The position numbers were made by a program, and so were the translations under genes. From Macrostomum lignano (Eukaryota), in assembly GCA_002269645.1 (NCBI GenBank), contig NIVC01000006.1, positions 744,001-808,000 on the forward strand: 64,000 nucleotides of DNA, given 5' to 3'. The notes beneath the pieces are model-generated. The model worked only from the letters and a program-made list of their open reading frames with translations, was not told the DNA's origin and did no database searches. Within the stretch, counting starts at the first letter, position 1, and every line of letters begins with the position of its first letter. Shown piece by piece: positions 1-30,974 of the stretch.

Positions 1-234
1 CCTGAAGCCGGGCAACATTCCGCCGCCGCCGCCGCCACCGCCAACGCCGGGGATGCTCAGCGCCGACAGCCGGCTGGCGGTGAACCTCGGCAAAACCTCC
101 GGCTGAGGAGGCGACTCGCCTGGAGCCAAGCTGAGCAGCAGTTCCACACGGTTGTGCAGCCACTCCAAGCTGCTGGCCAGGACGGCCTCGGAGTCTTCAT
201 CTCTGAGGTTGATGCGGACTGTCTGCACGCTGAC
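1..234 (-). CDS. Internal exon of unidentified gene (continues beyond window start)
   Basis: Acceptor gtcgcag| then open frame VSVQTVRINLRDEDSEAVLASSLEWLHNRVELLLSLAP...GGGGMLPGFR to base 1; GC-rich; an alternative phase-2 acceptor at 241 is possible. Confidence 0.55.
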
Positions 235-283
235 CTGCGACCTGCGGCGGCTGAGGATGGGGAGGCAGGGACAAGTTTTCAAT

Positions 284-1600
284 TGCGATTCCAATTGGCG
301 ATTTTTCAATGGCGATTCCAATTGGCGATTTTTCGATGGCGATTTCTTAAGGGCGATTCCAATTGGCGATTTTTCGATGGCGATTTCTTAAGGGCGATTC
401 TCATTGGCGATTTTTCGATGGTGATTTCTCAAGGGCGATTCTCATTAGCGATTTTTTGGTGGTGATTTCTTAAGGGCGATTCTCATTAGCGATTTTTTGG
501 TGGTGATTTCTTAAGGGCGATTCTCATTAGCGATTTTTTGGTGGTGATTTCTTAAGGGCGATTCTCATTAGCGATTTTTTGGTGGTGATTTCTTAAGGGC
601 GATTCTCATTAGCGATTTTTTGGTGGTGATTTCTTAAGGGCGATTCTCATTGGCGATTCTCATTGGCGATTTTTCGATGGTGATTTCTCAACGGCGATTT
701 TCATTAGCGATTTTTGGTGGTGATTTCTTAAAGGCGATTCTCATTGGCGATTTTTCAATAGCGATTCTCATTGGCGATTTTTAGATGGTGATTTCTTAAG
801 GGCGATTCTCATTGGCGATTTCTCGATGGCCATTTCTTAAGGGCGATTCTCATTGGCGATTTTTCGATGGTGATTTCTAATGGGCGATTCTCATTAGCGA
901 TTTTTGGTGATGATTTCTTAAAGGCGATTCTCATTGGCGATTTTTAGATGGCGATTTCTTAAGGGCGATTCTCATTGGCGATTTTTCGATAGCGATTCTC
1001 ATTGGCGATTTTTCGATGGTGATTTCTCATGGGGGATTCCCATTAGCGATTTTTGGTGGTGATTTCTTAAAGGCGATTCTCATTGGCGATTTTTCAATAG
1101 CGATTCTCATTGGCGATTTTTAGATGGTGATTTCTTAAGGGCGATTCTCATTGGCGATTTCTCGATGGTGATTTCTAATGGGCGATTCTCATTAGCGATT
1201 TTTTGGTGGTGATTTCTTAAAGGCGATCCTTATTGGCGATTTTTCGATAGCGATTCTCATTGGCGATTTTTAGATGGCGACTTCTTAAGGGCGATTCTCA
1301 TTGGCGATTTTTCGATGGTGATTTCTCAACGGCGATTTTCATTAGCGATTTTTGGTGGTGATTTCTTAAAGGCGATTCTCATTGGCGATTTTTCAATAGC
1401 GATTCTCATTGGCGCTTTTTAGATGGTGATTTCTTAAGGGTGATTCTCATTGGCGATTTTTTGATAGCGATTTCTCGATGGCGATTTCTTAAGGGCGATT
1501 CTCATTGGCGATTTTTCGATGGCGATTTCTTAAGGGCGAGTCTCATTAACGATTTTTCAAGGGCGATTTTTAAATGGCGATTCTCATTTGCAATTTTTCA
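284..1600. repeat. Intronic tandem satellite, ~41-bp unit built of GGCGATT(T/C) submotifs
   Basis: Repeated ggcgattctcattggcgatttttcgatggtgatttcttaag variants. Confidence 0.95.
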
Positions 1601-1734
1601 AGCGCGATTTTTAGGGAAATTTTTCCAAGGCGATTCCGAGGCAGTTTTAAGCAGACCCAGGTTAAACACGAGTGATGCTGTAGTACTAGCTAAAAACGCA
1701 TCTAGGCTTGATTAAAAGCAGTCTAATCTCTCAC

Positions 1735-1836
1735 CTTGTACTGCTGCATAGTCCGCAAGCCCCTGACATTTGCGGCGGCAGTCGACAAGCCGACAACGGG
1801 CCTAGGACGGCTGCAATTGTAAGTGAAGGTAATCAT
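1735..1836 (-). CDS. Probable first coding exon of unidentified gene
   Basis: ATG at 1836, MITFTYNCSRPRPVVGLSTAAANVRGLRTMQQYK, strong donor AAG|GTGAGA, phase 0 matches exon 1-234. Confidence 0.45.
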
Positions 1837-1934
1837 CTTGACAACATGCACACTGCAGAGCGGCTCTGGGATTGCAACGGAGATTGTTGAACTTTGTACG
1901 CAATAAATTGTAGTTTAATTGATGCTAGATATGG

Positions 1935-3020
1935 TGGATTGCCTCAGGTGGTAGATGGTCGAAGGTGGTAGATGGTCGAAGGTGGTAGATGGTCCCAGGT
2001 GGTAGATGGTCCCAGATGGTAGAGGGTCATAGGTGTTAGATGGTCCCAGGTGGTGGATGGTCCCAGATGGTAGACGGTCACAGGTGGTAGATGGTCTGAT
2101 GGTCCCAGGTGGTAGATGGTAGATGGTCCCAGGTGGTAGATGGTAGACGGTCCCAGGTGGTAGATGGTCCCAGGTGGTAGATGGTCTGATGGTCCCAGGT
2201 GGTAGACGGTCACAGGTGGTAGATGTTCCCAGGTGGTAGATGGTCCCAGGTGGTAGATGGTCTAATGGTCCCAGGTGGTAGACGGTCACAGGTGGTAGAT
2301 GTTCCCAGGTGGTAGATGGTAGATGTTCCCAGGTGGTAGATGGTCGAAGGTGGTAGATGGTCCCAGGTGGTAGATGGTCCCAGATGGTAGACGGTCACAG
2401 GTGGTAGATGGTCTGATGGTCCCAGGTGGTAGATGGTAGATGGTCCCAGGTGGTAGATGGTAGATGGTCCCAGGTGGTAGATGGTCTGATGGTCCCAGGT
2501 GGTAGATGGTAGATGGTCCCAGGCGGTAGATGGTCCCAGGTGGTAGATGGTCTGATGGTCCCAGGTGGTAGATGGTAGACGGTCCCAGGCGGTAGATGGT
2601 CCCAGGTGGTAGATGGTCTGATGGTCCCAGGCGGTAGATGGTCCCAGGCGGTAGATGGTCCCAGGCGGTAGATGGTCCCAGGCGGTAGATGGTCCCAGGC
2701 GGTAGATGGTCCCAGGCGGTAGATGGTCCCAGGCGGTAGATGGTCCCAGGTGGTAGATGGTCTGATGGTCCCAGGTGGTAGATGGTAGATGGTCCCAGGT
2801 GGTAGATGGTAGATGGTCCCAGGTGGTAGATGGTAGACGGTCCCAGGTGGTAGATGGTAGACGGTCCCAGGCGGTAGATGGTCCCAGGTGGTAGATGGTC
2901 TGATGGTCCCAGGTGGTAGATGGTAGACGGTCCCAGGCGGTAGATGGTCCCAGGTGGTAGATGGTAGACGGTCCCAGGCGGTAGATGGTCCCAGGTGGTA
3001 GATGGTCTGATGGTCCCAGG
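1935..3020. repeat. 17-bp satellite GGTCCCAGGTGGTAGAT with GGTAGAT subunits
   Basis: Direct tandem repetition; explains the spurious ORFs at 1915-3099. Confidence 0.95.
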
Positions 3021-3384
3021 TAGCAGATGGAGGGCAGGTCCTATAAAAGATCCAATCAATCAAATTAATCAAATAAGTCAAAGTGGAGAAGAATAACACG
3101 AAAACTTATCAAAATACGGAAGCAAATGCTTACTAGAAAAATTCAGACTAATTGTTAATTACCGAAAAGGATTAGTAACAGAATAATATTATTGGCATTA
3201 TTAATTTTTGAGTAAAATGCAGTATGTCTTAAATGCCTATGCAAAATTGTTATTAATAGTGAAGAATATGAGCGTTAGGGATTCGTTTCAAACCCCAAGT
3301 TACTGGTAAAAGTACAAAAATAAATTGAAGTTTTGCAATGGTCATTAGTTGGATATTGTTACTAAATAGGAAATCGCCCTGCTA

Positions 3385-3591
3385 TCAAGGCTTAGTGTAA
3401 TAGGCCTGACTGAACTTGTTGCAAATTTGCACGGCCTTGTTGTACATGTCCATGTCGAAGTTCTCAGAGCAGCCTCTGTCCAGCTGCACCAGGTGCTGCA
3501 CAGAGACAGAGTTGTCGGACAGGGCGCTGCCAACCACCTCGACGAGGCTGCCCGGCTCGGCGTGGAACTCGCGAGACAGCTGGGCTTTCAC
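3385..3591 (-). CDS. RPA3: Replication protein A 14-kDa subunit, exon 2 (last)
   Basis: Acceptor cccgccag|GTG; [24 protein letters not shown]...[21 protein letters not shown] resembles the RPA3 C-half (GIVEVVG...FDLGLYNEAVKIIHDF); TGA at 3385-3387. Confidence 0.9.
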
Positions 3592-3689
3592 CTGGCGGGA
3601 GGCGTTTCGGTGGATTTGGTTACTGTATGGGTTGGGTGTGCGTGTTGTGCGCTCTTGATTGTGTCTGTACTGCTGTGCTGATGGCTGAC

Positions 3690-4885
<1,196 letters not shown>

Positions 4886-4913
4886 TACAGGTCAATCAGT
4901 CAATAAGACACAC

Positions 4914-5084
4914 CTGCACAGAGTCGGAAGCCTCAAGCAGCAGGCAGGTGGGGCTGGGACAGCTCACCACCCGGCCCAGCAGGCACACGCAGGCGCCCTG
5001 GTGCTGGGCCAGCAGCCCGCCATTGACCCGATGCCGGGCCCTGGCCTCGTCGCTGGAGTCCACGTCCATCACGCTGGTGTTCAT
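4914..5084 (-). CDS. RPA3: Replication protein A 14-kDa subunit, exon 1
   Basis: gccATG; MNTSVMDVDSSDEARARHRVNGGLLAQHQGACVCLLGRV resembles RPA3 [23 protein letters not shown]; donor CAG|GTGTGT, phase 0; spliced product 125 aa. Confidence 0.9.
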
Positions 5085-5934
5085 GGCGCTGGCTACGAGA
5101 AGGGTGCAAATGGCTGAAAGTAATGAGGTAGAAAAACGTGAAAATATTCTATGGAGATATTTTGTACTAACGGAAATCCTCTCATTTTACTTTCTATTCT
5201 CTCTAATATCACTGTTTATTCTCTAATCTCACTGCCTATTTTCTAATCTCACTGTCTATACTCTAATCCAACAGACTATTCTCAAATCTCGCTGTCTATT
5301 CTCCAACCGAACTGCCCATTCTCTAATCTTATTGTCTAGTCTGTAATCTTGCTGTCTATTTTCTTATCTCACTGTCTATTATCTAATCTCATTGTCTAGT
5401 CTCTAATCTCTCCCTATTCTCTAATCTTATCCGTCAATCTTCATATCTCCCATCTCGCTTTTGTCTGTAATTTTGTCTCCATTCCTATATCAAACCAGTT
5501 AAATCGTTTCACGCCCAATACACATCAAGTCACAACTACAAAACATAAAAATAAATTTGATTACAAAAAATATTTCACAGCTTCTAATTTTTCAGTCTCA
5601 CTTTAATTAAAATTTGTGAATAGTGGCGCAGAGTGCAGAGATTTTTAAGCCACTGCGAGACTGCGTTTTAAATAGCAAAAACGAAGCAGACAATGGAATA
5701 AAACGCAGAAATATATTTTGGTGCGCTTGAAAGTCAGAACAGCATTAATAATAGCCGCCTAGTAAACATTCTAGTAATAAAATAGTGTTGACTAGATAGA
5801 GAAGTGGCGATTACCGAAGTGCTTTTTAACAGAGAATATAATAAAATTAAATATTGCTTTGCAGATAGATCTGATCGGGTTTGCTAAATTGCCTTGACGG
5901 GGGCTTGACACTTATGACTTAATAATAGATTAAT

Positions 5935-6590
5935 TATCACCTGGATGGAATGGGGGACTGAGAGCCAATGAGTAATTATCCCCTGGATGGAATGGGGGGA
6001 CTGAGAGCCACTGAGTAATTATCCCCTGGGTGGAATGGGGGGACTGAGAGCCAATGAGTAATTATCCCCTGGGTGGAATGGGGGGACTGAGAGCCAATGA
6101 GTAATTATCCCCTGGGTGGAATGGGGGACTGAGAGCCAATGAGTAATTATCCCCTGGATGGAATGGGGGGACTGAGAGCCAATAAGTAATTATCCCCTGG
6201 GTGGAATGGGGGGACTGAGAGCCAATGAGTAATTATCCCCTGGATGGAATGGGGGGACTGAGAGCCAATGAGTAATTATCCCCTGGGTGGAATGGGGGAC
6301 CGAGAGCCAATGAGTAATTATCCCCTGGATGGAATGGGGGGACTGAGAGCCAATGAGTAATTATCCCCTGGGTGGAATGGGGGACTGAGAGCCAATGAGT
6401 AATTATGCCCTGGATGGAATGGGGGGACTGAGAGCCAATGAGTAATTATCCCCTGGGTGGAATGGGGGACTGAGAGCCAATGAGTAATTATCCCCTGGAT
6501 GGAATGGGGGACTGAGAGCCAATGAGCAATTATCCCCTGGATGGAATGGGGGACTGAGAGCCAATGAGTAATTATCACCTGGATGGAGGA
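5935..6590. repeat. 42-43-bp G-rich satellite, ~15 copies, each with AGCCAATGAG
   Basis: tatcccctggatggaatgggggactgagagccaatgagtaat repeated. Confidence 0.95.
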
Positions 6591-7004
6591 GTTGAATAGC
6601 CGGAAATTATAATTGCACACTATACATAAAACGCAGGCGCTTGAACAAAAAACTTAAGCATATAATCTATAGTGTTAATTATTCATTCATTACGAAGCAA
6701 AATTGTCTCAAAGATCAAGGAATGGCGTCAGTGCTGCGTGTTTGTAACCTTTTATGCGGGCACCAATTGCTAAAAACAAGAAAATACACTGTCAAGAAGA
6801 AAATAGGCAACATAAAAACAAAAGCAGCTACTAATAAAGATATGAATCATTCGATTAACATAGCATTTTGTGGCCCACAGAAACAGGGTTGCTAGGGGAC
6901 GGAATAGTTGCTATTATCAGATTTTATTCAACTATTGTCAAGGCCAAATGCCGATTTTAGATATATGGGCACAAGTATAGTAGGGGTGAGTGGGGCGCTG
7001 GTCG

Positions 7005-7220
7005 GGAACATGTACATTGAGGAGTGAGTGGGGTGGTCGCGAGGAGTGTACATTGGGGAATGAGTGGGGTGGTCGCGAGGAGTGTACATTGAGGAGTGAG
7101 TGGGGTGGTCGCGAGGAGTGTACATTGGGGAATGAGTGGGGTGGTCGCGAGGAGTGTACATTGAGGAGTGAGTGGGGTGGTCGCGAGGAGTGTACATTGG
7201 GGAATGAGTGGGGTGGTTGG
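7005..7220. repeat. 36-bp minisatellite with alternating variants (72-bp dimer)
   Basis: gaggagtgtacattg(a/g)gga(g/a)tgagtggggtggtcgc. Confidence 0.9.
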
Positions 7221-8755
7221 GAGCAATTGTATATAGAAAGGTTCTTTTTTAGGCATGGATAACTATTTAGCCACCTATAAAAGTTCAGTAAAGGTGCAAA
7301 TAAAAAATAAAAAAGGGGCAGAATAGGCGAGACAAGTGCTTGTGCACAGTCTAAAAACTTCTTTGTGACAAACAACTAGCAAAAAACGCATACCTTGTGC
7401 TTTGTGTGAGGAAAATAAAGAGAAAACTATGACATACCGATGATGATGACAATCAGCAGGTGCATTCCAGAAAGTGGAAGTGGCGAGTAAAATTTACAAG
7501 CTATTAAAAACTTAAGAAGTAGTATCGTGTGCACTTCTGAGTACTAGTACGAGTAGAAATTCCAAAAAATAATTTTTGAGAACTCCAATTTTTTTGCATC
7601 TTGTGGAATGATTTATCATTCAGCAGATTATCTAAATAATTTTTTTTTCAATAATAATAATGCTAGCCGCCGCGATGCAAACGTTTTACAATTATACAAA
7701 TTTTATCCTGCTAATTAAAAAAGGTTAAAGAAAACCTCTCATTACAGAGCGCCATCAATGGAGACCTCTGATTCTGCTTAGAGGTTATAAACAGAAAAAC
7801 AAAACAAAAAGTGTGTGTGTGTGTGTGTAAAAAAACAGAAAATAAAAGAACATGAATAAAATTTGCACAACCAAATTCGGTTATCGTAGGCAGCAGTGTG
7901 CTACTATAAGTAGCAAGGAGAACAAGCTAAAATTAGAGGTTAACAAAAAAGGTAATTCTATGCTGTTTTCTTAAAAACTCCATGTCTATGTCAGAAACAG
8001 AAATATGTGTGTTTTCGAAGAAACGGTATCGCTGATCCGCCAACAGCCTGTGTTCCAAGAAACAATACCATTTCTTAGAAAATTACTCATTCAAAAGTGT
8101 ACGCAAGTTTAAGGAACACATTTCTGTAATATAAGCAAAGAAGTCAAGAGCAATTGAAATGTGCGAGCAAAAAGGAAAAAATTAAATAAACAACTGACTA
8201 CTGACAGAGACAATTAAGTAGCGTGCACAAAATGCCGCATATTAATAGTATTATTGTAACGAAACAATATTTTTCTCTTAAATAAAAATTGGTCAAAAAG
8301 CGAATGGGTAAATTATTTTGCTTTTAATTAAAAATGTGGATTTTTATTAATGAAGAAATACTTTGCAGTCGGTGTTAGAAGATCAATCATGGGGATTGCT
8401 GCTGTGTACACATTTTTATTTCAAAAGAGGCCAGTTCAAGGCTGACTTTCCAATCTAATCATAAAGCTCCCGTACAATTTATTAACAAGTGGAGAATCAG
8501 TAAATACTGGTAGTACAGATTAGTATGACTAGATAAAGAAAAAATCCACAGTGATTTGACAAGAAAGTGCAGATTGACTAGAAATTATTGCAGACATTAC
8601 TCACAAACAGAATATTAGGTAACAGCATATCCCAGGGTTAGATTCAAAACGCATTTATTAATTAGACATTCCTTAATTACTTACTATAAGTAGCTTGATC
8701 ATTTTCTTCAACAAGTTAACAGTAAATTAAAAAACACGGTCGTTGTTCCCAAGAA

Positions 8756-9622
8756 CAGATACTAGAATAGCTAACTATGCCACGCGCAACAAAAGTTGTG
8801 AAAAGTTTCTTTTTCAGCAGTTTTGCCTCGCAGTGTCACTTGAAATTAATACGGAAGCTAAAATTTCCTTTCCTTCCTCTGAAGGAGCACATGGAGTTGG
8901 GAATGGGAAAAGCAAGCTTTTAACTCAAGGTACACAAGGTAAACGCAGACGGATGAAACCCTGTCTAGGAGTGCAGAACAATCTGGTTCAGCCAATGAGA
9001 GAGCAGTAAGGAGAGAGATCAAAGTCAGAAGGACGAAACTCAGCCTAGGGCGAAGGCCCAATCCATGTCAGCCAATGAGAGAGCAGTAAGGAGAGAAATC
9101 AAAGTCAGAAGGATGAAACTCAGCTTAGGGGACAGGCCCAGTCTAGCTCAGCCAATGAGAGAGCAGTAAGGAGAGAAATCAAAGTCAGAAGGATGAAACT
9201 CAGCTTAGGGGACAGGCCCAGTCTAGCTCAGCCAATGAGAGAGCAGTAAGGAGAGAGATCAAAGTCAGAAGGACGAAACTCAGCCTAGGGCGCAGGCCCA
9301 ATCTAGCTCAGCCAATGATTGGGAAGTAAGGAGAGAGGTCAAAGTCAGATACAAGCGGACAAGAGGAAATCCAAAACTGTTTATCGGCCTGGCTGAAGCG
9401 CCACCCCCTTTCTCTCTTGCTCGCCATGCACACGCACTGGATCTGACTTTTTCAAGGTAAAGATGCCAATTTAAATGGTCTGTTTGTAGAAAGCCTGAGC
9501 TAATTGTTACAGCTTCAACAAAAACTTAAATTTTTTTACAAAAAGTAAAATTAACTGAAAAAGCTAAAAAGAGTAGATAAGCGCGTTTTTGCGAGTGATA
9601 TCTAGCTATTCTAGTATCTGTG
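8756..9622 (+). mobile_element. Non-autonomous TIR element (copy A) with internal 80-bp array
   Basis: CAGATACTAGAATAGCTA at 8756 and its inverse TAGCTATTCTAGTATCTG(TG) at 9603-9622; internal array and flanks homologous to the inverted copy at 19535-20584; no TSD found for this copy. Confidence 0.75.
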
Positions 9623-10532: not shown

Positions 10533-10554
10533 CTGCGGGATCGGGTGCGGCAAT

Positions 10555-19122: not shown

Positions 19123-19155
<33 letters not shown>

Positions 19156-20584: not shown

Positions 20585-20605
20585 ATTGACACTGGAAGCG
20601 AAGCA

Positions 20606-21305: not shown

Positions 21306-21492
21306 CTGCGGGAGGTTCAATAAGCATGTCTGAGGTTATAGTCTAGTGATAATATGATTTATGATTTAGATCTATTTTAGATCTATGATTTATGATTTAT
21401 TAATAAATCTTCATGGATAGCAACCCCATTTTAATTTTTTATCCTTAATTGAGCACTTGCAGATCATCACATATCTACATAGACTGAGTTAC

Positions 21493-23105
21493 CTGGCAAC
21501 GTCATCAGCATCCTCAGAATCCACGGCATCGTTCGGTCCTTCAGCTCCCATCAGCCAGCCAAGCAGCTGTACAAACGCGCCCCGCTTACGACAGCTCTTG
21601 CTGTTGAATTCATCATCATTGCCCACCCGTTCGCGAATCTGTTCGGCAAGTTCATCGCCTTCGCTCAGCCACAGGCAGAGGCAGCGGGAGCAGGCGGCCA
21701 AGAACAGTCGCTGAGGCCGATTCGAACCAGCGTAAGCAGCTGTCAGCGGCGATTTCATAACTGCAGAAGCTCCAGCAACAAGACGATCCAATAGAAGATC
21801 AAAAGCGTCGCTGAGACGAGTAAGTAATCGCTCAAAATAATCCGGTCGTTGATCGGCGCCACGGTCCGATTGCTGCTGCTCCAACAATCGGCGAATAGTT
21901 TCTTCTAGTAGAACGAAACAAGCGCCAAGAGTTTCGCGATGCTGCGAACTCGCGATTACAAGTTCAAATGCTCGGTCGCTTTCGTCCGCAAGATTTAATC
22001 GGACATCAACTTCCAAAGCGGCCAACGAGCCGATCAGGTAGAGCAGCTCCGATTCGGCCACTGCACCAGAGCTCGCCTTGCTATCAACAATGTCCGCAAG
22101 ACCACGCTTGCTAGCCGAAGCTAAATTGGCTAATAGCGACAGACTGACAGCTCGAAGACTGCGGTTGCCAAGGAGACTGGGCATCAAAGGACGCAACTGC
22201 TCGGTTAGACGACCAGACGAAATTTTGACGCAGTTTGGCGTAACGTAGGACAACAGCTGACTGACGAATTCGAGGATATCCGCCGTGCCGGGTAATTGGG
22301 AATCCTCGGTCGGGGATTTCCCTTGGGATTCCCCGCTTGAGGATTTCCCTTGGGATTCCCCGGATTGGGTTTTCCCTTGGGAATCATCAGTTGGGGATTT
22401 CCCTTGGGATTCCCCACGTGAAGAGTTCCCTTGATCGGACTGCTTTGTCTTGGACAGTTCAGCTTGAAACTCTTCGACAAGCTCAGCGGTTAGGTTAGAG
22501 AGCAGCTTGTCAACAGATGGAGCCACTCGATCAAGCATGCCGGCAAAAGCGCACCGATCCAACGCCACCAGCGCTAGCCTCAGGCTGCTATCCCACTCCG
22601 GCAGCCGGTTGAGCACAGATTCCACAAGAGTTCCCACTAGCGGCGAATCTGCCAAGAACTCTCTGCACTGATCCAGCTCTAATCCACAGGCGATAAAGTA
22701 CAGCGCCTGGTGAAGCTGCTCAACAAGTTGGCGAATCTCCTCGGATTGAGCGGCAGCCGGCTGCCACCGAGCCAGGCATCGGCAGAGGCCATTCAGCAGG
22801 TCGGGGAAATCCGCCCGGCCAGCCAGTCCGGCCAAGTCTCGCTCGGCCAAGTGTCCGATAATCGAGGCCGCGGCGGAGACGTGCGCCAGCGTGTCCGCAT
22901 CGTCGCCGTCGCCCTCGCCGTCGCGGTCGACTAGAAGCAGGCGTAGCAAAAATTTGGTATCGATATGAGCAAATACTGAGCTGCTCTCGGGGGCGCTGAA
23001 TGCGGCCAGCTGACGGGCGGTGAGCAGTAGAGCGGCCACCCGGTCATTGTCTGTGCCGGCTTTGGCCAGCGCCTTAGCGCATAGAGCTGCGGCTGATTGG
23101 CGCGA
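21493..23105 (-). CDS. NCDN: Neurochondrin, large first coding exon (no ATG at start)
   Basis: ALAKAGTDNDRVAALLL..TKFLLRLL ~ NCDN ALREAKNDSEQFAALLL..FTFPNRLL; LAALEVDVRLNL..ACFVLLE..SRCLCLWLSE ~ LACVEVRLAL..ACYALME..VRILGAWLAE; acceptor ttacttttcag|TCG, donor AG|GTAACT. Confidence 0.8.
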
Positions 23106-23226
23106 CTGAAAAGTAAATTAGTAATATTTCAATATGCTGCTAAGAATCCTAATCGCACTACTTATAGCAGCATGGTCGGGAAACTCAACAGAGGTCTGCA
23201 AAAAGCCTCTCCAACCAGCCCTCGGG

Positions 23227-23890
23227 TCCTTTGAAACTTCACAATAACAATCCGGCCTGTGTCGCTTCTCCCCCTTCTCTCATCTCTCCTTTCTTGTCTC
23301 TTCTCTTCCCATTCTCTAATCTCTCTTTTCTCTCGCCCTTCTCTCTTCTCTCTCCATTCTATCTTCTCTCCTCTCTTCTCTCTCCATTCTATCTTCTCTC
23401 CTCTCTTCTCTCTTCTCTCTTCTCTCTCCATTCTATCTTCTCTCCTCTCTTCTCTCTTCTCTCCCCTCTTCTCTCATCTCTCCTTTCTTCTCTCCCATTC
23501 TCTCTTGTCTCCCCCGCCCCTTCTCTCCCCCTTTCTCTTTTGTCTCCTCTCTTCTCTCATCTCTCCCCTCTTCTCTCATCTCTCCCCTATTCTTTCTTCT
23601 CTCCCCTCTTCTCTCTTCTCTCCTCCCTTTGCTCTTTTCCTCTCTATTCGCTTCTCTCTTCTCTCCTCCCTTTATCTTCTCACTTCTCTCCCCTCTTTTC
23701 TCTCTCTCCTTATCTCTACTTCGTTTCCATCGCTCGTCTTATCTCTCAGTTCTTCGCCTCTCTCGCAATCTTACCTTTCATTGCTAATCTTCTTCTCTCC
23801 TCTATCTCCCCTTTTCCTTCCCTCACTCGCCTGGCCCACAGCCATGAGCTGGATTCTTTATCTAGCGCTTGATATAAGTCTGCCGACCCC
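23227..23890. repeat. CT-rich polypyrimidine element with conserved ends (copy 1)
   Basis: TCCTTTGAAACTTCA ... CT tract ... GCCATGAGCTGGATTCTTTATCT, same ends as 43583-45058. Confidence 0.75.
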
Positions 23891-24206
23891 TGTCACATAG
23901 CAGAGGGGTGCAAATGAAAAAAATTCACAAAAGACGTTTAAAATCGTGAATTAGCTTTAAATGTGTGCTTATTATTTAAGAAAATTCAGTGTAAAAATAT
24001 TATTAAAACTTATTATTCTGTAAATACAGAATTAGATAGAATACCGGATATGAAGCATGCAAACTATTGAAACAAAATCATTCAATGGCAATGATTTATA
24101 TATAAAAATCTGAATCTAATGGAATAATCAAACTCTTATTATAGAAATGCTTACTATTGATTCGAATAGCTCTTTACGAATAGATAACGCTCGCAATAAC
24201 TAATAT

Positions 24207-24299
24207 TTATGGTTGCTGCCGTCCGTTTTTTTGCCGCGCGTAAAGCTGCTGCAGTGCTTTCATTTGTTCCACCAATGAGGCCAATTCTGATGGTGACTT
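24207..24299 (-). CDS. GNPTG: GlcNAc-1-phosphotransferase gamma subunit, exon 4 (last)
   Basis: Acceptor ttcccag|AAG, phase 0; KSPSELASLVEQMKALQQLYARQKNGRQQP* is a coiled-coil-like tail like that of GNPTG. Confidence 0.65.
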   Translation of the reverse strand, partial: KSPSELASLVEQMKALQQLYARQKNGRQQP

Positions 24300-24314
24300 C
24301 TGGGAATGGAAAAT

Positions 24315-25050
24315 GTAATTGCTACTCATTTAGCGACTCATTTGACTACTCATTTATCTACTCATGAAGCTACTCATTTATCTACTCCTTTAGCTACTGA
24401 TTTAGCTACTGATTTAGCGACTCATTTGACTACTCATTTATCTACTCCTTTAGCTACTGATTTAGCTACTGATTTAGCGACTCATTTGACTACTCATTTA
24501 TCTACTCATTAAGCTACTCATTTATCTACTCCTTTAGCTACTCCTTTAGCTACTGATTTAGCGACTCATTTGACTACTCATTTATCTACTCATTAAGCTA
24601 CTCATTTATCTACTCATTTATCTACTCATTTATCTACTCCTTTAGCTACTGATTTAGCAACTCATTTGACTACTCATTTATCTACTCATTTATCTACTCC
24701 TTTAGCTACTCATTTAGCGACTCATTTGACTACTCATTTATCTACTCATGAAGCTACTCATTTAGCGACTCATTTGACTACTCATTTATCTACTCCTTTA
24801 GCTACTCAGTTATCTACTTATTTAGCTACTCTGTTATCTACATATTTAGCTACTCAGTTATCTACTCATAAAGCCACTCAGTTATCTACTCATATAGCTA
24901 GTCAGCTATCTACTTATTTAGCTACTCAGTTATCTACTTGTTTATCTACTCATTTATCTACTCATTTAGCTACTCATTTAGCTACTTATATATCTATTTA
25001 GTTATCTATTATCTACTCATTTATCTACTCATTTAGCTACTCATTTAGCA
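24315..25050. repeat. 12-bp intronic satellite (ctactcatttag/ctactcatttat)
   Basis: Tandem repetition. Confidence 0.93.
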
Positions 25051-25081
25051 ACTAACTAATAAAAGGAAGGGCTAAGCTTAC

Positions 25082-25240
25082 TGTATACGCTTCAACAGAC
25101 GCTTCAGTGAAAGCAGCTGATACTACTAACTCAGTAGAATAAGCAGGTGTTGCAGATGATTTCACTTGATTAGGAAATTTTCGAGTGTCAGAAAGCAGGC
25201 CAACTCTAAATATTAAATTGTCCAACAGCAATTCGTAACT
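25082..25240 (-). CDS. GNPTG: GlcNAc-1-phosphotransferase gamma subunit, exon 3
   Basis: SYELLLDNLIFRVGLL ~ GNPTG GHEKLLRTLFEDAGYL; acceptor attgcag, donor ACA|GTAAGC, 159 nt, phase 0/0. Confidence 0.75.
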
Positions 25241-25969
25241 CTGCAATGGGAAAATAGGGGAAACCGTGAGAGAGGGGATCAAAAGAAAACGGGGAAATGA
25301 AACAGAAGAAATGAGGATTAAGAAATTTCCATTTTACAACGGTCAAGGCCAAAGGCAGACAGGAAGGAAGGAGAGAGACTGACTGTTAGCAAGCAGAACA
25401 GTCAAGTGAAGCAAAAATGAGGCAATTATCTCCTACATCAAGTTGAGCATGCTGAATTTCCTTCCGTTGTGGGGAAATTACTAATTTTATCATAATCGAT
25501 TAGATAGAAACTCGGTTGACCTTACTACCAGTAAGGGGAATTATTACTTTTAATAATATGACATATGAAGTCTTACATGCACTTAAGCCAAGTATTAAAG
25601 CAAATTAATAAACAGCAAGGAAATTTCGGGTTTAAAGAGCAATCTAGTTGCTAGGGTAGCTTCAATATGCCTAGAATAGAATTAGATCTCATATTTCGTT
25701 GCCCCGTGTAGCCATCAATAGAAACAACAGCTTTGGTAACTCAGTAATGTAATCTGTCAAATTCTTCCCATTGTGCACAGAAAACAGCTATATGCCGATT
25801 TCCTAACATTGCGCGCTATTTAACAATAGTTTAAATGGGGACGGGGCAAGGACTAGCTGCCTCATGATGGTATATGAGGGGACTCTGTGTGAACGTCTGT
25901 ATGAGTGCGTGCGTGCCGATAGTATTGGCGCTTCTATGTGCTCAGGAGTCAGCGGAATGACCTACCGGA

Positions 25970-26290
25970 AAGATCTATGACCTACCAGTACCAGAAGATC
26001 TATGACCTACCAGTACCAGAAGATCTATGACCTACCAGTACCAGAAGATCTATGACCTACCAGTACCATAAGATCTATGACCTACCAGTACCAGAAGATC
26101 TATGACCTACCAGTACCAGAAGATCTATGTCCTACTAGTACCATAAGATCTATGACCTACCAGACCTACCAGTACCATAAGATCTATGACCTACCAGACC
26201 TACCAGTACCAGAAGATCTATGAACTACCAGTACCAGAAGATCTATGAACTACCAGTACCAGAAGATCTATGTATGAAACACCAGGAAGA
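25970..26290. repeat. 25-bp minisatellite aagatctatgacctaccagtaccag, decaying to ~26500
   Basis: Tandem repetition. Confidence 0.9.
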
Positions 26291-26650
26291 CATATGACTT
26301 ATCAGAAAGGTTGGTCTATGACATATCAGACAAGTTTATGAACTACGAGAAGAATCTATGACCTACAATCAAGATTTTTGACCTACCAGAAAGGTCGGAA
26401 CTACCAAAAAGGTAGGTCTTTGAGCTATCAGAAAGGTATATGAACTAACAGGAAGAATGGAAAATCTATGAACTTCCAGAAAGGTCTATGACCTACCTTA
26501 AGAAAGAAGGAAAAATCTTTGTCCCTGAGAAATTTACTCAAATAAGGTAATTCATAAGAACTGAAGAAAGAATGACTTCAAGAAAATATTTTTTCGTTTT
26601 AACTTTTAATTAAAGAATTCGCATAATTTCGGTCCCTTGCTTATATTGGC

Positions 26651-26680
26651 TGCCCCGAAAGGGGGGCACTGGATTGCTAG
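26651..26680 (+). mobile_element. Putative Helitron 3' terminus (GC hairpin + CTAG|T)
   Basis: TGCCCC-gaaagg-GGGGCA hairpin at 26651-26668 followed by CTAG at 26677-26680 and T; 5' end not located. Confidence 0.4.
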
Positions 26681-27104
26681 TCCATATACTATAAATGGTC
26701 TTATCTAAAAATTGGAATTACTAACAAAAAACTACAATAAACAAACTCTAGGAAAGAAAACAGCAAGACACGTGCTTGAAGCGGACTTGACCTTTAACTG
26801 CACTGCGAAGTTTTAACCGGTTAGACAATAATTTTTTAATACTAGAGCAAAATGTAACGAAAATATTTGGTTGGACCAATTATTGGAAACTACAACTACA
26901 CTACGACTACGACTACAAGTATTCTTCTACATGCACTCCTCGAAGTTTATTTAATATAAACAGTTCCTCTTAAGCTCCAGTCAGCCTGAATTTTATGCAA
27001 AAATAAATTTCCTCGTTCTTGTAAGAGTACCCTGAGGAATTCCCCTCTGAGCGTTTTAATGTCAAAAAGATTAAAAATATTTCCCTGAAATCCTAAATTC
27101 ATAG

Positions 27105-27330
27105 GGGAATTGCTGAGATGTCAAGGCTCACGGGGAGGGGGAATTGCTGAGATGTCAAGGCTAACTGGGGAAATTGCTGAGATGTCAAGGCTCACGGGGA
27201 GGGGGAATTGCTGAGATGTCAAGGCTCACGGGGAGGGGGAATTGCTGAGATGTCAAGGCTAACTGGGGAAATTGCTGAGATGTCAAGGCTAACTGGGGAA
27301 ATTGCTGAGATGTCAAGGCTAACGAGGAGA
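27105..27330. repeat. 30-35-bp minisatellite (ggaattgctgagatgtcaaggct...)
   Basis: Tandem repetition. Confidence 0.88.
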
Positions 27331-27585
27331 ATTGCTGGGACGTCGAGGCTCATGTGGGTTTCTCACATGCCTTGAGCCACAGCTCATAGAGGATCTGCAT
27401 CTGATATCGTAGGCTAGACTTCCCTTAAGAGATTAACACTAGCGAACGTACAAGGTCAAAGAAACCAACATGCAGTTGATTAAAAAACATTCTTGCCTCC
27501 CCAACCCCAACAGGAGAGCCAAGAAGGCTAACTTAGTAACAAAATTTTTAGATACTCTCCTGAGAAGTTCCTCAACAACACTTAC

Positions 27586-27910
27586 CGATGCATTCAGCAG
27601 TCCCCGATGCCTCATAGTGTACAGAGCATCCCAAACTGAACGCTGCCGCTCAGTCAGTGACGGATAAACCTGCATAGACTTCGAACCCGTCACGGACTGA
27701 CATGCCAGCGGTGTCTCTAGCAACATTTTGTACTGACAGACTGGAGACTCGACCACTGAGGCCAGCCGAGTGGCCCTGGAGCAGGCCAATTCGACTAGAG
27801 TTCGTCTCGAATCGCGTCCGTGGCCGCAGGGCACGCCGTTTGGCATTGCCATGGCAACTAGGCGGCTTTCGTTGGCGCCACTGTGATCCACGAGCCAGCC
27901 GTCCCACACT
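27586..27910 (-). CDS. GNPTG: GlcNAc-1-phosphotransferase gamma subunit, exon 2 (MRH domain)
   Basis: VWDGW..GVPCG..RRTLVELACSRATRLASVVESPVCQYKMLLETPLAC..MQVYPSL..WD ~ GNPTG [52 protein letters not shown]; donor TCG|GTAAGT. Confidence 0.88.
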
Positions 27911-28094
27911 CTGGGGAATAAGATGGATTAGGGATTCTTGACAGATGCTTGAGATGGGGATCTGGGGAATAAGGCGTCTGTGATTGGGACCTGGGGAATC
28001 AGATGTCTCAGATGGGGATCTGCATCTGGGGAATCAGGTGCCTTAATAGGAATTTGAAGAATCAGATGCCTGAAATGGGGACTGGGGTAATCAG

Positions 28095-28540
28095 AGGCGT
28101 GACGTGTAGGGAATCAGAGGCCTGGTATCTAGGGAATTAGAGGTCTGATATCTAGGGAATCAGAGGCCTGACATCTAGGGAATCAGAGGCCTGATATCTA
28201 GGGAATTAGAGGTCTGATATCTAGGGAATCAGAGGCCTGACATCTAGGGAATCAGAGGCCTGACATCTAAGGAATCAGAGGCCTGGTATCTAGGGAATTA
28301 GAGGTCTGATATCTAGGGAATCAGAGGCCTGACATCTAGGGAATCAGAGGCCTGAAATCTAGGGAATTAGAGGCCTGATATCTAGGGAATCAGAGGCCTG
28401 ACATCTAGGGAATCAGAGGCCTGATATCTGGGGAACCAGAGGCCTGACATCTAGGGAATCAGAGGCCTGATATCTAGGGAATCAAAGGCCTGATATCTAG
28501 GGAATCAGAGGCCTGACACCTAGGGAATCAGAAGCCTAAG
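28095..28540. repeat. 23-bp intronic satellite tctagggaatcagaggcctgata
   Basis: Tandem repetition. Confidence 0.93.
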
Positions 28541-28578
28541 AGAACACAGACACAAGAGAATCAGTAGTCAATAATCAC

Positions 28579-28967
28579 CCAATAACACCATGAAAGCCAT
28601 CTAAAGCGCGATAGACCACATCGCGCTGAGTAGCATTGTCAAATGGGCACAGTGTATACTCATACTGCGCCCCAACTTGAGTTGAATAGCATCGACCAAA
28701 AAGACCAGAGATAAGTCTAGCTGGACCACTAGGAGGCTTAGCTGTTACAGGCTTCTTCGGTTGTTGTGGTCGCTGCTGCTGCTGCTGTTGTTGTTGTTGT
28801 TGAAAATAATTATGCGGCGAATCAAGAACTTTTATTGGTACTTGATGATTTGCAGCTGCCAGTTCATTGTGCAACTGCATAGGCAACATTGCAAAAGCTG
28901 AGCTGGTAATACAATGAAGCACAAAGTTGACTACCATAACAGTAGTGCACAGCACAAACTTTATCAT
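28579..28967 (-). CDS. GNPTG: GlcNAc-1-phosphotransferase gamma subunit, exon 1
   Basis: Signal peptide, poly-Q linker, SGPARLISGLFGRCY..YEYTLCPFDNATQ ~ SGPVHLFRLSGKCF..YKYEFCPFHNVTQ; donor GG|GTGATT, phase 2; spliced product 321 aa. Confidence 0.88.
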
Positions 28968-30974
28968 AATAAAGATCTAGTTGTTTCTGCAATATGTATT
29001 GTTGTAATAAATCTTCCAATGGTGTAACTCATACACCCATACAATAAACTAATACAAGGTCAAAGGCATGAGAGAATTATGGATAACAATGTTGGCATAG
29101 CAAATTGGGCTGACTTACAAGTACTTATATTAGAAATACAAAAAAACTGCTATATACACTCTGTACAAATGCAACCTATAAAATTAAACTGGCTATATGA
29201 CTTAGGTCTGACTGAAAACCTACCAAATATCTTATTATAACTTAGTCTGCTGCTAGTGCAACTCAACTACTCTTTTGTGACTTAATTTTTCTTCTATTGC
29301 AATTCACTTTGTTTTATATTCACTCTTTGATTATTATGTATAGACTTTTCTTTTTTGCTTACCTGTGCTATTTTTATCTTTTTCTTAGGTTGTTTGTTTT
29401 CTTTTTTCATTTTTTAATTTTGGTTATCAATTTTGCAGCTTACCTTTTGCCTGCCTATCCTTTATTGGACCTTGCAAACCACTTCTTAATGGTTAAAAAT
29501 TGCTAAAGTAATAATAAAAACCTTTCTGACTAAAAGCATAAAAACATATAGCCTTAAGTTCATTACCTTTAATATTAGTATATCATATTATACTATGAGA
29601 ATGAAACATTTTATTTCAACCCTAGTGTTATGTCATAAAAAATATTTATAATTTAATTTAAGTGTGCTTAATCCAAATTCCAAAAGCAATAATTGTTCTA
29701 ACTTGAAAATGAGAATCAAAGACAAAGTAGACTCCTAAGGTAACACTGAGCCTGTATATTGCATACTATATTGATCTAATTGACTTTATTGATGACTATA
29801 CATGCTTATTATGACTTATCAACACTTAACTTAGGCCTACTCTCATACTAATGCATACTTATGATCATTCATTTTAATCCTGCACCCAAAACCCCATTTG
29901 CTCTTACATTACTTTATTCAACCTAAAAACCAGTGTCTGTACCTAGTTACTTTAATTATTAAAATACTCATATTCAATCTAAAGAAACATGTCAATAATC
30001 TACTTTAATAGGTTTTCATTTTGAAATTTTAACTTTTAGAAATTATTTATTTTAATAAATAATTTGAAAAAAAACTTGCAATGGCCTAGTTTCATAGATA
30101 ATTTGCTTTAAAAAAACAAGGATTGAATCTATATATTAACAAATTTCTAAATATAATAATTACCCTAGTATCACTATCAGCCTAGGTTTATTTTTGAACA
30201 ATAGGGATTCTATAGCAATATGACTCAAAATTTTATCTTTAGACTAGACTTTCAATAAGGTTTTATATGCTAATACTAACAAAAACCCAGCTATTAGCCA
30301 AGTCTAGTGTTTTTGTTTCCTAGACCAAAAACTTATAAGTATATTTTATTAACTTAAAAAGTTTTTTATCTATATTTTTATATTAACCATTACAGACTAT
30401 AATCAAGAAAATTACCTATAGGAATATAGGCTATAATACATAAATCAGAAATGTGGTTTTTTAGCTTTTATTGGAATTTTTAGGTCTAATATTGATATAC
30501 AGTTGGTAGGCCTATACAAAAAATGGCTAGCTAAATAAAATTCAGGTTTGGCTTTATATAGGCCCTATAATATAGGGGCCTAGCTAAATTTCGAGCAAAC
30601 TCAAAGAAAGCTTTTCTAAAAAAGGAAAATAATGAAAATATTAATGCACCTTATTGGAAAAATAAAAAACTAGGCTTACTAGGCCCTAATTCCTAGCAAA
30701 ATTAGATAATTTATTATATTTAGGCAAATTTGTCAGTTTTGCTTTTAAAAGAATATAAAACACTTGGCAAGGCTAGACCTACAAAAATTATTTTTGGTAT
30801 ATTTTTAATGTATATCAACTTTAGGCTAGAACTAGCAATCTTCGCCCCCCATTGGGGGACATCTGTATAGAATCTCTGTTCTCTACAAGTAACAAAAAGA
30901 TAGCCAAAAACAGCCTTCACATAGAAAACAGACAAAATATTCAAATGAAGTGCAATGCAAAAAGAAATCATCCC

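What the first reader, a model, noticed from the sequence alone, without database searches (positions are those of the whole stretch)
1..28986. Seven consecutive co-oriented genes with acceptors just upstream of their starts: candidate trans-spliced operon
Seen: GNPTG, NCDN, ORF149, PLPBP, the LDLa-like gene, RPA3 and the unknown gene all lie on the minus strand. Stop-to-start gaps are only ~1.1-4.8 kb, and much of that is satellite or TE. U-rich acceptors sit just before the coding starts: GNPTG ttgcag 19 nt, PLPBP tttcag 15 nt (a satellite begins right behind it, leaving little room for a promoter), RPA3 tttcag 29 nt, NCDN ttttcag 0 nt. Established: flatworms use spliced-leader trans-splicing, and operon-like polycistronic units are reported in them. 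Inference: this is one or more polycistronic units of housekeeping genes. Seven genes on one strand by chance is about 1 in 64.
Basis: partly seen in the sequence, partly recalled or inferred. Interest (0 to 1): 0.72.

Follow-up and report, generated by a model that had tools for sequence, protein, structure and literature searches.

The report
Trans-spliced gene cluster in a flatworm
Seven neighbouring same-strand genes of the flatworm Macrostomum lignano all get the spliced leader at acceptors just before their coding starts, and the published annotation already groups several of them into shared multi-gene transcripts, so this is a correct reading of a known kind of flatworm operon.

Summary
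The window is Macrostomum lignano Mlig_3_7, NIVC01000006.1:744001-808000. Seven co-oriented minus-strand genes lie in 1-28986: a GNPTG-like MRH protein, neurochondrin, ORF149, PLPBP, a 372-aa membrane protein (no LDLa support), RPA3 (two exons) and a SERAC1-like gene.

Every gene has a [T/C]TNCAG acceptor at its mRNA 5' end. [quoted passage not shown]
- annotated 5'-partial CDS that start at the junctions;
- a published table that flags NCDN and RPA3 as TRANSSPLICED;
- NCDN having no ATG of its own for 186 codons (the SL ends in ATG, in frame);
- four assembly "footprints" where the last 3-4 bases before a junction read as the SL 3' end;
- an orthologous PLPBP transcript that starts with the SL.

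Polycistrony is supported only indirectly. GNPTG, NCDN and PLPBP share one transcriptional-unit prefix (Mlig010458 g1-g3), and the paralogous locus joins GNPTG, NCDN and ORF149. Five of six satellite-adjusted gaps are under the published 1-kb operon threshold. TM372 to RPA3 (about 3.3 kb) is not.

The likeliest layout is two or three units, not one seven-gene operon. This class is already described and annotated in M. lignano, so interest is low.

The parts
24260..28986 (-). GNPTG-like MRH-domain gene (BOX15_Mlig010458g1). The mRNA starts at junction 28986 and the ATG is at 28967. CDS exons are 28967-28579, 27910-27586, 25240-25131 and 24299-24260. The introns hold four satellites.
   Evidence: Pfam PRKCSH/PRKCSH_1. 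P0133 was mapped to the window. The paralogue's 5'-partial CDS starts 1 nt after the homologous ACAG junction.
28987..28992 (-). GNPTG trans-splice acceptor TTGCAG, 19 nt before the ATG.
   Evidence: Sequence. The AG position is kept in paralogue L005 although the flanks diverge.
20606..23105 (-). Neurochondrin gene (BOX15_Mlig010458g2). The CDS begins at the first base after the acceptor. It has no ATG for 186 codons, and there is an in-frame TAA 15 nt upstream in the outron. The SL ATG must supply the start codon. Exons are 23105-21492 and 21304-20606.
   Evidence: The gene is flagged TRANSSPLICED with an mRNA of 3466 nt in Grudniewska 2018 Suppl. Table 2.
23106..23112 (-). NCDN acceptor TTTTCAG, directly abutting the first codon.
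   Evidence: It is 100% identical in paralogue L005.
17821..18344 (-). ORF149 transcript. The SL junction is at 18344, followed by a 74-nt 5'UTR and the ORF at 18270-17821. Coding status is doubtful.
   Evidence: The paralogue is annotated as Mlig021282g3. Between the two copies there are 9 nonsynonymous and 4 synonymous differences, and there is no Pfam hit.
18345..18351 (-). ORF149 acceptor overwritten in this assembly copy. It reads TTGCATG (the SL 3' end) where paralogue L005 reads TTTTCAG.
   Evidence: The assembly was polished with RNA-seq reads.
14233..15654 (-). PLPBP gene (BOX15_Mlig010458g3). The junction is at 15654 and the gene's own ATG at 15639 is in frame with the SL ATG. Exons are 15654-15208, 14691-14422 and 14301-14233.
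   Evidence: NCBI protein P0015 starts PQQQEM at the junction. L005 carries an SL footprint at the same junction. An orthologous transcript begins with the SL.
15655..15660 (-). PLPBP acceptor TTTCAG. A 700-nt 23-mer satellite (15667-16366) begins 13 nt upstream of the junction.
9867..12163 (-). Exons are 12163-11711 and 10532-9867. The intron holds a 24-mer satellite.
   Evidence: The model reproduces P0007 exactly. There is no Pfam family.
12164..12167 (-). TM372 acceptor overwritten. It reads CATG (the SL 3' end) where both paralogues read TCAG (TTTCAG). The apparent genomic ATG at 12166-12164 is therefore an assembly artefact.
   Evidence: Pilon polishing with RNA-seq.
3385..5113 (-). RPA3 gene (BOX15_Mlig033707g3). 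The junction is at 5113 and the ATG at 5084. Exons are 5113-4914 and 3591-3385. The intron holds 1.2 kb of (AGAC)n.
   Evidence: The gene is flagged TRANSSPLICED with an mRNA of 707 nt. Paralogue L003 has a 10-nt SL footprint, TTATTGCATG, at this junction.
5114..5119 (-). RPA3 acceptor TTTCAG, 29 nt before the ATG.
1..1810 (-). 5' part of the SERAC1-like gene (643 aa, DUF676 serine esterase). Exon 1 is 1810-1735. Exon 2 runs from 250 off the left end of the window. Intron 1 holds the 27/41-mer satellite at 279-1610.
   Evidence: The annotated 5'-partial CDS starts at 1808, 2 nt after the junction.
1811..1816 (-). SERAC1-like acceptor TTGCAG.
   Evidence: It is identical in all three copies.
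23106..24259 (.). Spacer GNPTG to NCDN. It is 1154 nt, or 703 nt after subtracting tandem repeats. It contains no AATAAA or ATTAAA.
15655..20605 (.). Spacers NCDN to ORF149 (2262 nt, 911 adjusted) and ORF149 to PLPBP (2166 nt, 966 adjusted). Satellites lie at 19828-20373, 18417-19221, 17180-17679 and 15667-16366.
12164..14232 (.). Spacer PLPBP to TM372. It is 2069 nt, or 787 nt adjusted.
5114..9866 (.). Spacer TM372 to RPA3. It is 4753 nt, or 3290 nt after tandem repeats (about 2800 if a MITE-like element with inverted ends at 8755-9621 is also removed). It is the only gap above the 1-kb operon threshold and the likeliest place for an internal promoter.
1811..3384 (.). Spacer RPA3 to SERAC1-like. 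It is 1574 nt, or 511 nt adjusted. Given the published 707-nt RPA3 mRNA, only about 200 nt are non-repeat between the poly(A) site and the acceptor.

Best explanation
This is a cluster of seven SL-trans-spliced genes in Macrostomum lignano. Each pre-mRNA has a [T/C]TNCAG acceptor at or within 74 nt upstream of its coding start. The 35-nt spliced leader, which ends in ATG, is joined there.

For NCDN the leader's ATG is the only possible start codon. For PLPBP and the 372-aa gene it is in frame and upstream of their own ATGs.

The cluster is most likely transcribed as two or three polycistronic units:
- GNPTG-NCDN-ORF149-PLPBP;
- the 372-aa gene, either alone or attached to the first unit;
- RPA3-SERAC1-like.

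The intercistronic spacers, normally about 100 nt, have been inflated to 1-2 kb by satellite arrays. Trans-splicing coupled to upstream 3'-end formation resolves the precursors into single mRNAs.

Shown here: gene identities, acceptors, and SL use (by indirect RNA evidence). Inferred: the physical continuity of the precursors, the RPA3-SERAC1-like pairing, and the absence of internal promoters.
For: Organism and locus.

SL sequence, acceptor motif and operon criterion: PMC8629364.

5'-partial annotated CDS start 0-2 nt after the acceptor:
- NCDN at 23105;
- PLPBP at 15654;
- TM372 at 12163;
- SERAC1-like at 1808;
- paralogous GNPTG at L005:3405.
Gene boundaries in this annotation were cut at SL-read peaks by the TBONE pipeline.

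NCDN and RPA3 of this very locus are flagged TRANSSPLICED in PMC5816591 Suppl. Table 2.

NCDN has no ATG for 186 codons and a stop codon 15 nt upstream of the junction.

Four SL footprints lie exactly at predicted junctions:
- window TM372 and window ORF149;
- L005 PLPBP;
- L003 RPA3.
They are explained by Pilon polishing with RNA-seq reads.

Logan transcript L006, a PLPBP orthologue at 76% identity, begins with the last 16 nt of the SL.

Polycistrony:
- transcriptional units sharing a prefix were clustered at 95% identity, and genes were then cut from them;
- Mlig010458 g1/g2/g3 are GNPTG, NCDN and PLPBP, and Mlig021282 g1/g2/g3 are GNPTG, NCDN and ORF149;
- repeat-adjusted gaps are 703, 911, 966, 787 and 511 nt, all under 1 kb;
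- the published mRNA lengths leave only about 200-450 non-repeat nt between the NCDN or RPA3 3' ends and the next acceptor.
Against: - No precursor or bridging read could be inspected directly.
- Transcriptional-unit calls differ between the paralogous loci. PLPBP has its own unit in the paralogue, and the third copy uses three different prefixes.
- RNA-seq was mapped allowing up to 1000 multimaps, so satellites could bridge units artificially.
- TM372 has its own prefix.
- The TM372-RPA3 gap stays at about 2.8-3.3 kb after repeat removal.
- Spacers of 1-5 kb could hold promoters. The authors report that 2 kb upstream is usually enough for correct expression.
- About 60% of trans-spliced genes in this species are not in operons.
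- NCDN and RPA3 respond differently to irradiation, which argues against their sharing one unit.
- If used, the SL ATG would open an out-of-frame overlapping ORF on GNPTG.
Confidence: 0.65

Rival explanations
1. All seven genes are SL-trans-spliced, but each is transcribed from its own promoter in the upstream spacer (monocistronic with an outron). The shared unit names reflect read-through or satellite-bridged assembly rather than functional precursors.
For: - About 60% of trans-spliced genes in this species are not operonic.
- The spacers are 1.1-4.8 kb and hold 0.5-3.3 kb of non-repeat sequence.
- Unit boundaries are inconsistent among the paralogous copies.
- RNA-seq was mapped with up to 1000 multimaps.
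- NCDN and RPA3 differ in their response to irradiation.
Against: - The same multi-gene unit, GNPTG-NCDN plus a third gene, was assembled independently at two paralogous loci.
- Five of six gaps fall under the published operon threshold.
- The PLPBP acceptor is embedded in the edge of a 700-nt satellite.
- No canonical poly(A) hexamer lies between GNPTG and NCDN.
Confidence: 0.25
2. The whole 29-kb cluster is one seven-gene operon driven by a single promoter upstream of GNPTG.
For: - All seven genes are co-oriented and all are trans-spliced (see the calls above).
- Operons of up to nine genes are reported in this species.
- The authors note that RNA-seq-derived units tend to break in repeat-rich spacers.
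- NCDN and RPA3 are both in the 'Neoblast, stringent' class.
Against: - The published annotation gives at least three different unit prefixes across the cluster.
- The TM372-RPA3 gap is about 3 kb of non-repeat sequence.
- RPA3 drops far more than NCDN after irradiation.
Confidence: 0.12
3. The acceptors are ordinary cis-splice acceptors of 5'UTR introns, with unrecognised non-coding first exons upstream and no spliced leader.
For: Sequence alone cannot tell a cis acceptor from a trans acceptor. GNPTG at this locus has only motif evidence.
Against: - Published TRANSSPLICED flags.
- SL footprints at four junctions.
- An SL-bearing orthologous transcript.
- NCDN needs the leader's ATG.
Confidence: 0.02

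Closest known systems
Macrostomum lignano operons and SL trans-splicing as described by Wudarski et al. 2017 (PMC5730564), Grudniewska et al. 2018 (PMC5816591) and Ustyantsev & Berezikov 2021 (PMC8629364)
   Same: - Same organism, same 35-nt spliced leader ending in ATG, and same [T/C]TNCAG acceptor.
- Co-oriented conserved genes.
- Intercistronic spacers inflated by repeats, with repeat-adjusted distances under 1 kb.
- Multi-gene transcriptional units cut at SL and poly(A) sites.
- NCDN and RPA3 of this very locus are already flagged as trans-spliced.
   Different: Nothing essential differs. This locus was never described individually. One gap (TM372-RPA3) fails the distance rule, so the cluster is more than one unit under that definition.
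Caenorhabditis elegans operons
   Same: - Co-oriented genes transcribed as a polycistronic precursor.
- Downstream genes are resolved by SL trans-splicing coupled to upstream 3'-end formation.
- Similar operon sizes of 2-8 genes (established knowledge; comparison made).
   Different: - C. elegans uses a dedicated SL2 for downstream genes and has raw spacers of about 100 nt.
- Here a single SL serves all genes.
- Raw spacers here are 1.1-4.8 kb and full of satellites.
- The leader here can donate the start codon.
Schistosoma and other parasitic flatworm SL trans-splicing
   Same: A single SL that ends in AUG. A minority of genes are trans-spliced. Few or small polycistronic units.
   Different: M. 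lignano has far more trans-spliced genes (30%) and far more operonic genes (15%).

Membership tests
SL-trans-spliced genes of M. lignano | An AG acceptor matching [T/C]TNCAG lies directly at the mRNA 5' end. | tested here: met
   TTGCAG or TTTCAG at 28987, 23106, 15655, 5114 and 1811. The ORF149 and TM372 acceptors are overwritten in the window, but their paralogues read TTTCAG.
SL-trans-spliced genes of M. lignano | The mature mRNA carries the 35-nt SL (CGGTCTCTTACTGCGAAGACTCAATTTATTGCATG) at its 5' end. | tested here: met
   The evidence is indirect but comes from several sources:
- published TRANSSPLICED flags for Mlig010458.g2 and Mlig033707.g3;
- SL 3'-end footprints at four junctions;
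- an orthologous PLPBP transcript that begins with the last 16 nt of the SL;
- 5'-partial CDS that start at the junctions.
Raw reads were not inspected. GNPTG at this locus rests on its paralogue only.
SL-trans-spliced genes of M. lignano | No cis donor site is paired with the acceptor in the outron. | not tested
   This needs RNA-seq junction data.
M. lignano operon (Ustyantsev & Berezikov 2021 operational definition) | Adjacent genes on the same strand, with no opposite-strand transcript between them. | tested here: met
   There are seven consecutive minus-strand genes. No annotated plus-strand gene lies in 1-33105.
M. lignano operon (Ustyantsev & Berezikov 2021 operational definition) | The downstream gene of each pair is SL-trans-spliced. 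| tested here: met
   See the rows above. This holds for all six downstream genes.
M. lignano operon (Ustyantsev & Berezikov 2021 operational definition) | The repeat-adjusted intergenic distance is under 1 kb. | tested here: inconclusive
   Met for 5 of 6 gaps (703, 911, 966, 787 and 511 nt, counted from the stop codon and subtracting tandem repeats only). Not met for TM372 to RPA3, at 3290 nt. Transposon masking as used in the paper was not available here.
Operon in the strict sense (one promoter, one polycistronic precursor) | A single primary transcript spans the genes. | tested here: inconclusive
   The published unit names link GNPTG, NCDN and PLPBP here, and GNPTG, NCDN and ORF149 in the paralogue. 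Unit calls differ between copies, and no reads were seen directly.
Operon in the strict sense (one promoter, one polycistronic precursor) | No internal promoters or transcription starts lie in the spacers. | not testable with these tools
   This needs RAMPAGE/CAGE data, chromatin marks or reporter assays.
C. elegans-type operon | Raw intercistronic distance of about 100 nt and a dedicated downstream leader (SL2). | tested here: not met
   Raw spacers are 1154-4753 nt. Only one SL is known in this species.

The most novel reading that the evidence does not exclude
The whole 29-kb cluster is a single seven-gene polycistronic unit. That would be close to the largest reported in this species. Its spacers would have been inflated up to 4.8 kb by satellite arrays, so RNA polymerase II would read through more than 10 kb of satellites. 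The spliced leader would supply the start codon for up to three of the seven proteins.
Probability: 0.12. Interest if true: 0.4.

Novelty: already known. Interest (0 to 1): 0.25.

Why it matters
For the biology, this is a clean worked example of what is already described genome-wide for M. lignano. [quoted passage not shown] It adds no new kind of system.

It is useful as a test locus for a question the field has addressed only computationally: do kilobase-scale, satellite-filled spacers really lack promoters? Stable transgenesis exists in this species, and the locus has three near-identical paralogous copies for comparison.

The practical by-product matters more. At 4 of 17 junction copies examined, the reference assembly has the acceptor overwritten by the 3' end of the spliced leader. 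This most likely comes from polishing with RNA-seq reads. It destroys real AG acceptors and creates false genomic ATG starts. If it is general, it affects motif statistics and start-codon calls across the Mlig_3_7 annotation.

Tried and rejected
- Looked for M. lignano transcript contigs (Logan) by exact-protein look-up, with and without an SL-donated Met. None are in the collection; only NCBI and UniRef entries exist. Direct SL or bridging contigs for this species were therefore unavailable.
- Searched paper full texts for the locus tags and found nothing. Supplements of PMC8629364 and PMC5730564 hold no gene lists.
- Searched Grudniewska 2018 Suppl. Table 2 for GNPTG, PLPBP and SERAC1 terms and found nothing. 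The stored table is cut within the first category, with 50,307 rows missing, so their absence means nothing.
- Used paralogous loci as a microsynteny test. They are recent duplicates, 86-98% identical including the satellites. Their shared gene order says nothing about long-term conservation. No annotated genome of another macrostomid was reachable.
- Ran a self-BLAST of the window for dispersed repeats. Only the satellites recur. Transposon content of the 4.75-kb gap could not be assessed beyond one MITE-like element with inverted ends.
- A tolerant alignment scan for more SL footprints gave only satellite noise.
- Rfam and tRNA scans found nothing in the window.
- A PDB sequence search with the NCDN N-terminus found no hit.
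- Rejected the 'LDLa-like' label, because there is no Pfam support.
A separate SERAC1-like gene starts at 1810.
- Rejected a biological origin for the footprints (cDNA-mediated gene conversion) in favour of the documented RNA-seq polishing. Each footprint changes only 3-4 bases, and the introns are intact.

Full report
**Origin.** The largest exon in the region (21492-23039, minus strand) matches, at 100% identity, a 770-aa partial protein of Macrostomum lignano, BOX15_Mlig010458g2. That protein is encoded on GCA_002269645.1 contig NIVC01000006.1. Coordinates from two independent loci agree that the window is NIVC01000006.1:744001-808000 in the record's orientation. So the organism is a free-living flatworm in which SL trans-splicing and operons are documented.

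**The seven genes.** All lie on the minus strand.
- *GNPTG-like MRH-domain gene:* Pfam PRKCSH/PRKCSH_1. NCBI protein P0133 maps to exons 28967-28579, 27910-27586, 25240-25131 and 24299-24260.
- *Neurochondrin:* Pfam E=5e-17. Exons 23105-21492 and 21304-20606.
- *ORF149 (18270-17821):* no Pfam family and not annotated at this locus. The paralogous copy is annotated as PAA70052.1. The two copies differ at 13 nt, 9 nonsynonymous and 4 synonymous. That is the neutral expectation, so its coding status is doubtful.
- *PLPBP:* Ala_racemase_N, E=4e-18, three exons with canonical splice sites.
It has no Pfam family, so the LDLa label is unsupported.
- *RPA3:* two exons, 5084-4914 and 3591-3385, with 1.2 kb of (AGAC)n in the intron.
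- *The 'unknown gene':* starts at 1810 and runs off the left end of the window. It encodes a 643-aa protein with a DUF676 serine-esterase domain, and its closest named relatives are schistosome SERAC1 proteins.
- *Upstream:* an 18-kb transposon-rich stretch separates GNPTG from ATG9, which is on the plus strand.

**The acceptors.** The SERAC1-like gene has ttgcag at 1811-1816. All match the published trans-splice acceptor motif [T/C]TNCAG. That motif occurs 42 times in 30 kb on this strand. One within 30 nt of a given ATG therefore has p of about 0.04, and four has p of about 3e-6.

**Is the spliced leader really added there?** Five lines of evidence say yes.
1. The GenBank annotation derives from a pipeline that cut gene boundaries at peaks of SL-containing reads. 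The 5'-partial CDS begin 0-2 nt after the acceptor for NCDN (23105), PLPBP (15654; P0015 starts PQQQEM), the 372-aa gene (12163), the SERAC1-like gene (1808) and the paralogous GNPTG (L005:3405, junction at 3404).
2. Supplementary Table 2 of Grudniewska et al. 2018 lists Mlig010458.g2 (neurochondrin, 3466 nt) and Mlig033707.g3 (RPA3, 707 nt), the genes of this very locus, as TRANSSPLICED.
3. The NCDN reading frame opens at the junction. It has an in-frame TAA 15 nt upstream in the outron and no ATG for 186 codons. The leader ends in ATG and is in frame, so it must supply the start codon. It is also in frame for PLPBP (five extra codons) and for the 372-aa gene.
4. Comparing the window with its paralogous loci revealed 'SL footprints'. 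At four junctions, one assembly copy has the last 3-4 bases before the junction replaced by the leader's 3' end.
   - Window 372-aa gene...TTCATG|TCACCT against TTTCAG| in both paralogues.
   - Window ORF149: CTTGCATG|AGG at 18344 against TATTTTCAG|AGC.
   - L005 PLPBP: TTATGCATG|CCACAG against TATTTCAG|.
   - L003 RPA3: TTATTGCATG|CT against TTATTTTCAG|.

   The assembly was polished with Pilon using RNA-seq reads as well as DNA reads. These are therefore almost certainly polishing errors. Even so, they record that SL-bearing reads dominated at exactly these positions.
5. A Logan transcript contig from another sequencing run (SRR28338163) encodes a PLPBP 76% identical to this one. It begins CTCAATTTATTGCATG, the last 16 nt of the leader.

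**Is it polycistronic?** The evidence here is indirect.
- *Unit names:* in the published assembly, RNA-seq-derived 'transcriptional units' were clustered at 95% identity and given a shared name prefix. The authors note that these units are often precursor mRNAs. Genes were then cut out of them.
  - GNPTG, NCDN and PLPBP of this locus are Mlig010458 g1, g2 and g3.
  - At the paralogous locus, GNPTG, NCDN and ORF149 are Mlig021282 g1, g2 and g3.
  - Three unrelated neighbouring genes can share a prefix only if they were cut from one assembled unit.
- *RPA3 numbering:* the RPA3 copies are g1 and g3 of Mlig033707. That suggests a second gene per unit, presumably the SERAC1-like gene, but its name was not visible. 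This step is inferred.
- *TM372 and inconsistencies:* the 372-aa gene has its own prefix. Unit calls are inconsistent between copies: PLPBP is separate in the paralogue, and the third copy uses other prefixes. The authors themselves say that units break in repeat-rich spacers.
- *Distance rule:* the published operational rule is a repeat-adjusted distance under 1 kb between trans-spliced neighbours. I counted from the stop codon to the next junction and subtracted tandem repeats only.

| Gap | Raw (nt) | Adjusted (nt) |
|---|---|---|
| GNPTG to NCDN | 1154 | 703 |
| NCDN to ORF149 | 2262 | 911 |
| ORF149 to PLPBP | 2166 | 966 |
| PLPBP to TM372 | 2069 | 787 |
| TM372 to RPA3 | 4753 | 3290 |
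| RPA3 to SERAC1-like | 1574 | 511 |

- *Non-repeat remainder:* the published mRNA lengths leave only about 200-450 non-repeat nt between the NCDN or RPA3 3' ends and the next acceptor.
- *The gap that fails:* the TM372-RPA3 gap stays at about 2.8 kb even after removing a MITE-like element. It is AT-rich unique sequence.

**Conclusion.** The likeliest layout is GNPTG-NCDN-ORF149-PLPBP, possibly with the 372-aa gene attached, and RPA3-SERAC1-like, with a probable break between 9866 and 5114. A single seven-gene operon is not excluded but is unlikely, at about 0.12. Independent promoters with read-through remain a real rival, at about 0.25. The spacers are long, unit calls vary between copies, multimapping reads could bridge satellites, and NCDN and RPA3 respond differently to irradiation although both are classed as neoblast genes.

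**Novelty.** This is an instance of a phenomenon described genome-wide for this species. Thirty per cent of genes are trans-spliced, 15% are in operons, spacers are inflated by repeats, and operons reach nine genes. The genes are already annotated accordingly. It is already known, and interest is low.

**Left unexplained.**
- The annotated RPA3 CDS starts 11-13 nt downstream of the acceptor in all three copies with no AG there. This may be over-trimming of the leader, because the exon start (CCATTTGCA) resembles the leader's end.
- The L003 SERAC1-like CDS starts at an alternative CTAG| site 9 nt downstream of the main junction.
- Homology between the two GNPTG copies ends 37 nt upstream of the acceptor. 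The upstream flanks are unrelated for at least 3.4 kb, so any promoter for the first gene is not shared between copies within that distance.

Noticed in passing
window 12164-12167 and 18345-18351; L003:9978-9987; L005:17496-17504: At 4 of 17 trans-splice junction copies examined, the assembly has the acceptor (TTTCAG) overwritten by the 3' end of the spliced leader ((TT)GCATG). The cause is probably Pilon polishing with RNA-seq reads. It removes real AG acceptors and creates a false genomic ATG, as for the 372-aa gene. If it is general, it would bias acceptor-motif counts and start-codon calls across Mlig_3_7.
   Followed up: partly
window 23105 (NCDN), 15654 (PLPBP), 12163 (372-aa gene): The terminal ATG of the spliced leader is in frame with three of the seven reading frames. 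For NCDN it is the only available start codon, because the first internal Met is residue 187. For GNPTG it would instead open an overlapping out-of-frame ORF.
   Followed up: yes
window 49686-52524 (+), inside ATG9 (exons 47424-48002, 48402-49253, 53440-53688): A P-element/THAP9-like transposase sits in an intron of the ATG9 gene, in the same orientation. It has THAP, Tnp_P_element, RNase H-like and GTP-binding-insertion domains and is split over three reading frames.
   Followed up: partly
window 34702-35160 (+), 57486-58151 (+), 37804-38657 (-): Two mariner/DDE transposase fragments and a hAT/ZMYM1-like fragment (DUF4371) lie in the 18-kb gene-poor stretch between GNPTG and ATG9 and downstream of ATG9.
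   Followed up: partly
window 8755-9621 and 19777-20416: The same 80-nt tandem repeat occurs twice in opposite orientations, once in the TM372-RPA3 spacer and once in the NCDN 3' region. The first copy is bracketed by 31-nt inverted repeats, which suggests a MITE-like mobile element that carries an internal satellite.
   Followed up: partly
window 29023 / L005:3373: Homology between the two paralogous loci stops 37 nt upstream of the GNPTG acceptor. The upstream flanks are unrelated. Identity also varies along the block, from 92% over GNPTG exon 1 to 98% from 26272 to 19988, which suggests a mosaic history or gene conversion.
   Followed up: partly
window 5102 (RPA3), L003:10001, L004:10001; L003:12360: The annotated 5'-partial RPA3 CDS starts 11-13 nt downstream of the acceptor in all three copies, with no AG there. 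This may be over-trimming of leader-like exon sequence. The L003 SERAC1-like CDS starts after an alternative CTAG 9 nt downstream of the main junction.
   Followed up: no
window 20606-23105 and 3385-5113: Neurochondrin is best known as a neuronal gene in vertebrates. In the published M. lignano expression table it is classed 'Neoblast, stringent' together with RPA3. The two differ strongly in how far they fall after irradiation.
   Followed up: no
L006 (Logan SRR28338163 contig, 988 nt): A mature PLPBP mRNA from a related species (76% protein identity) carries the same leader 3' end, followed by a 67-nt 5'UTR. Both the leader sequence and trans-splicing of this gene are therefore conserved beyond M. 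lignano. The species of that run was not identified.
   Followed up: partly
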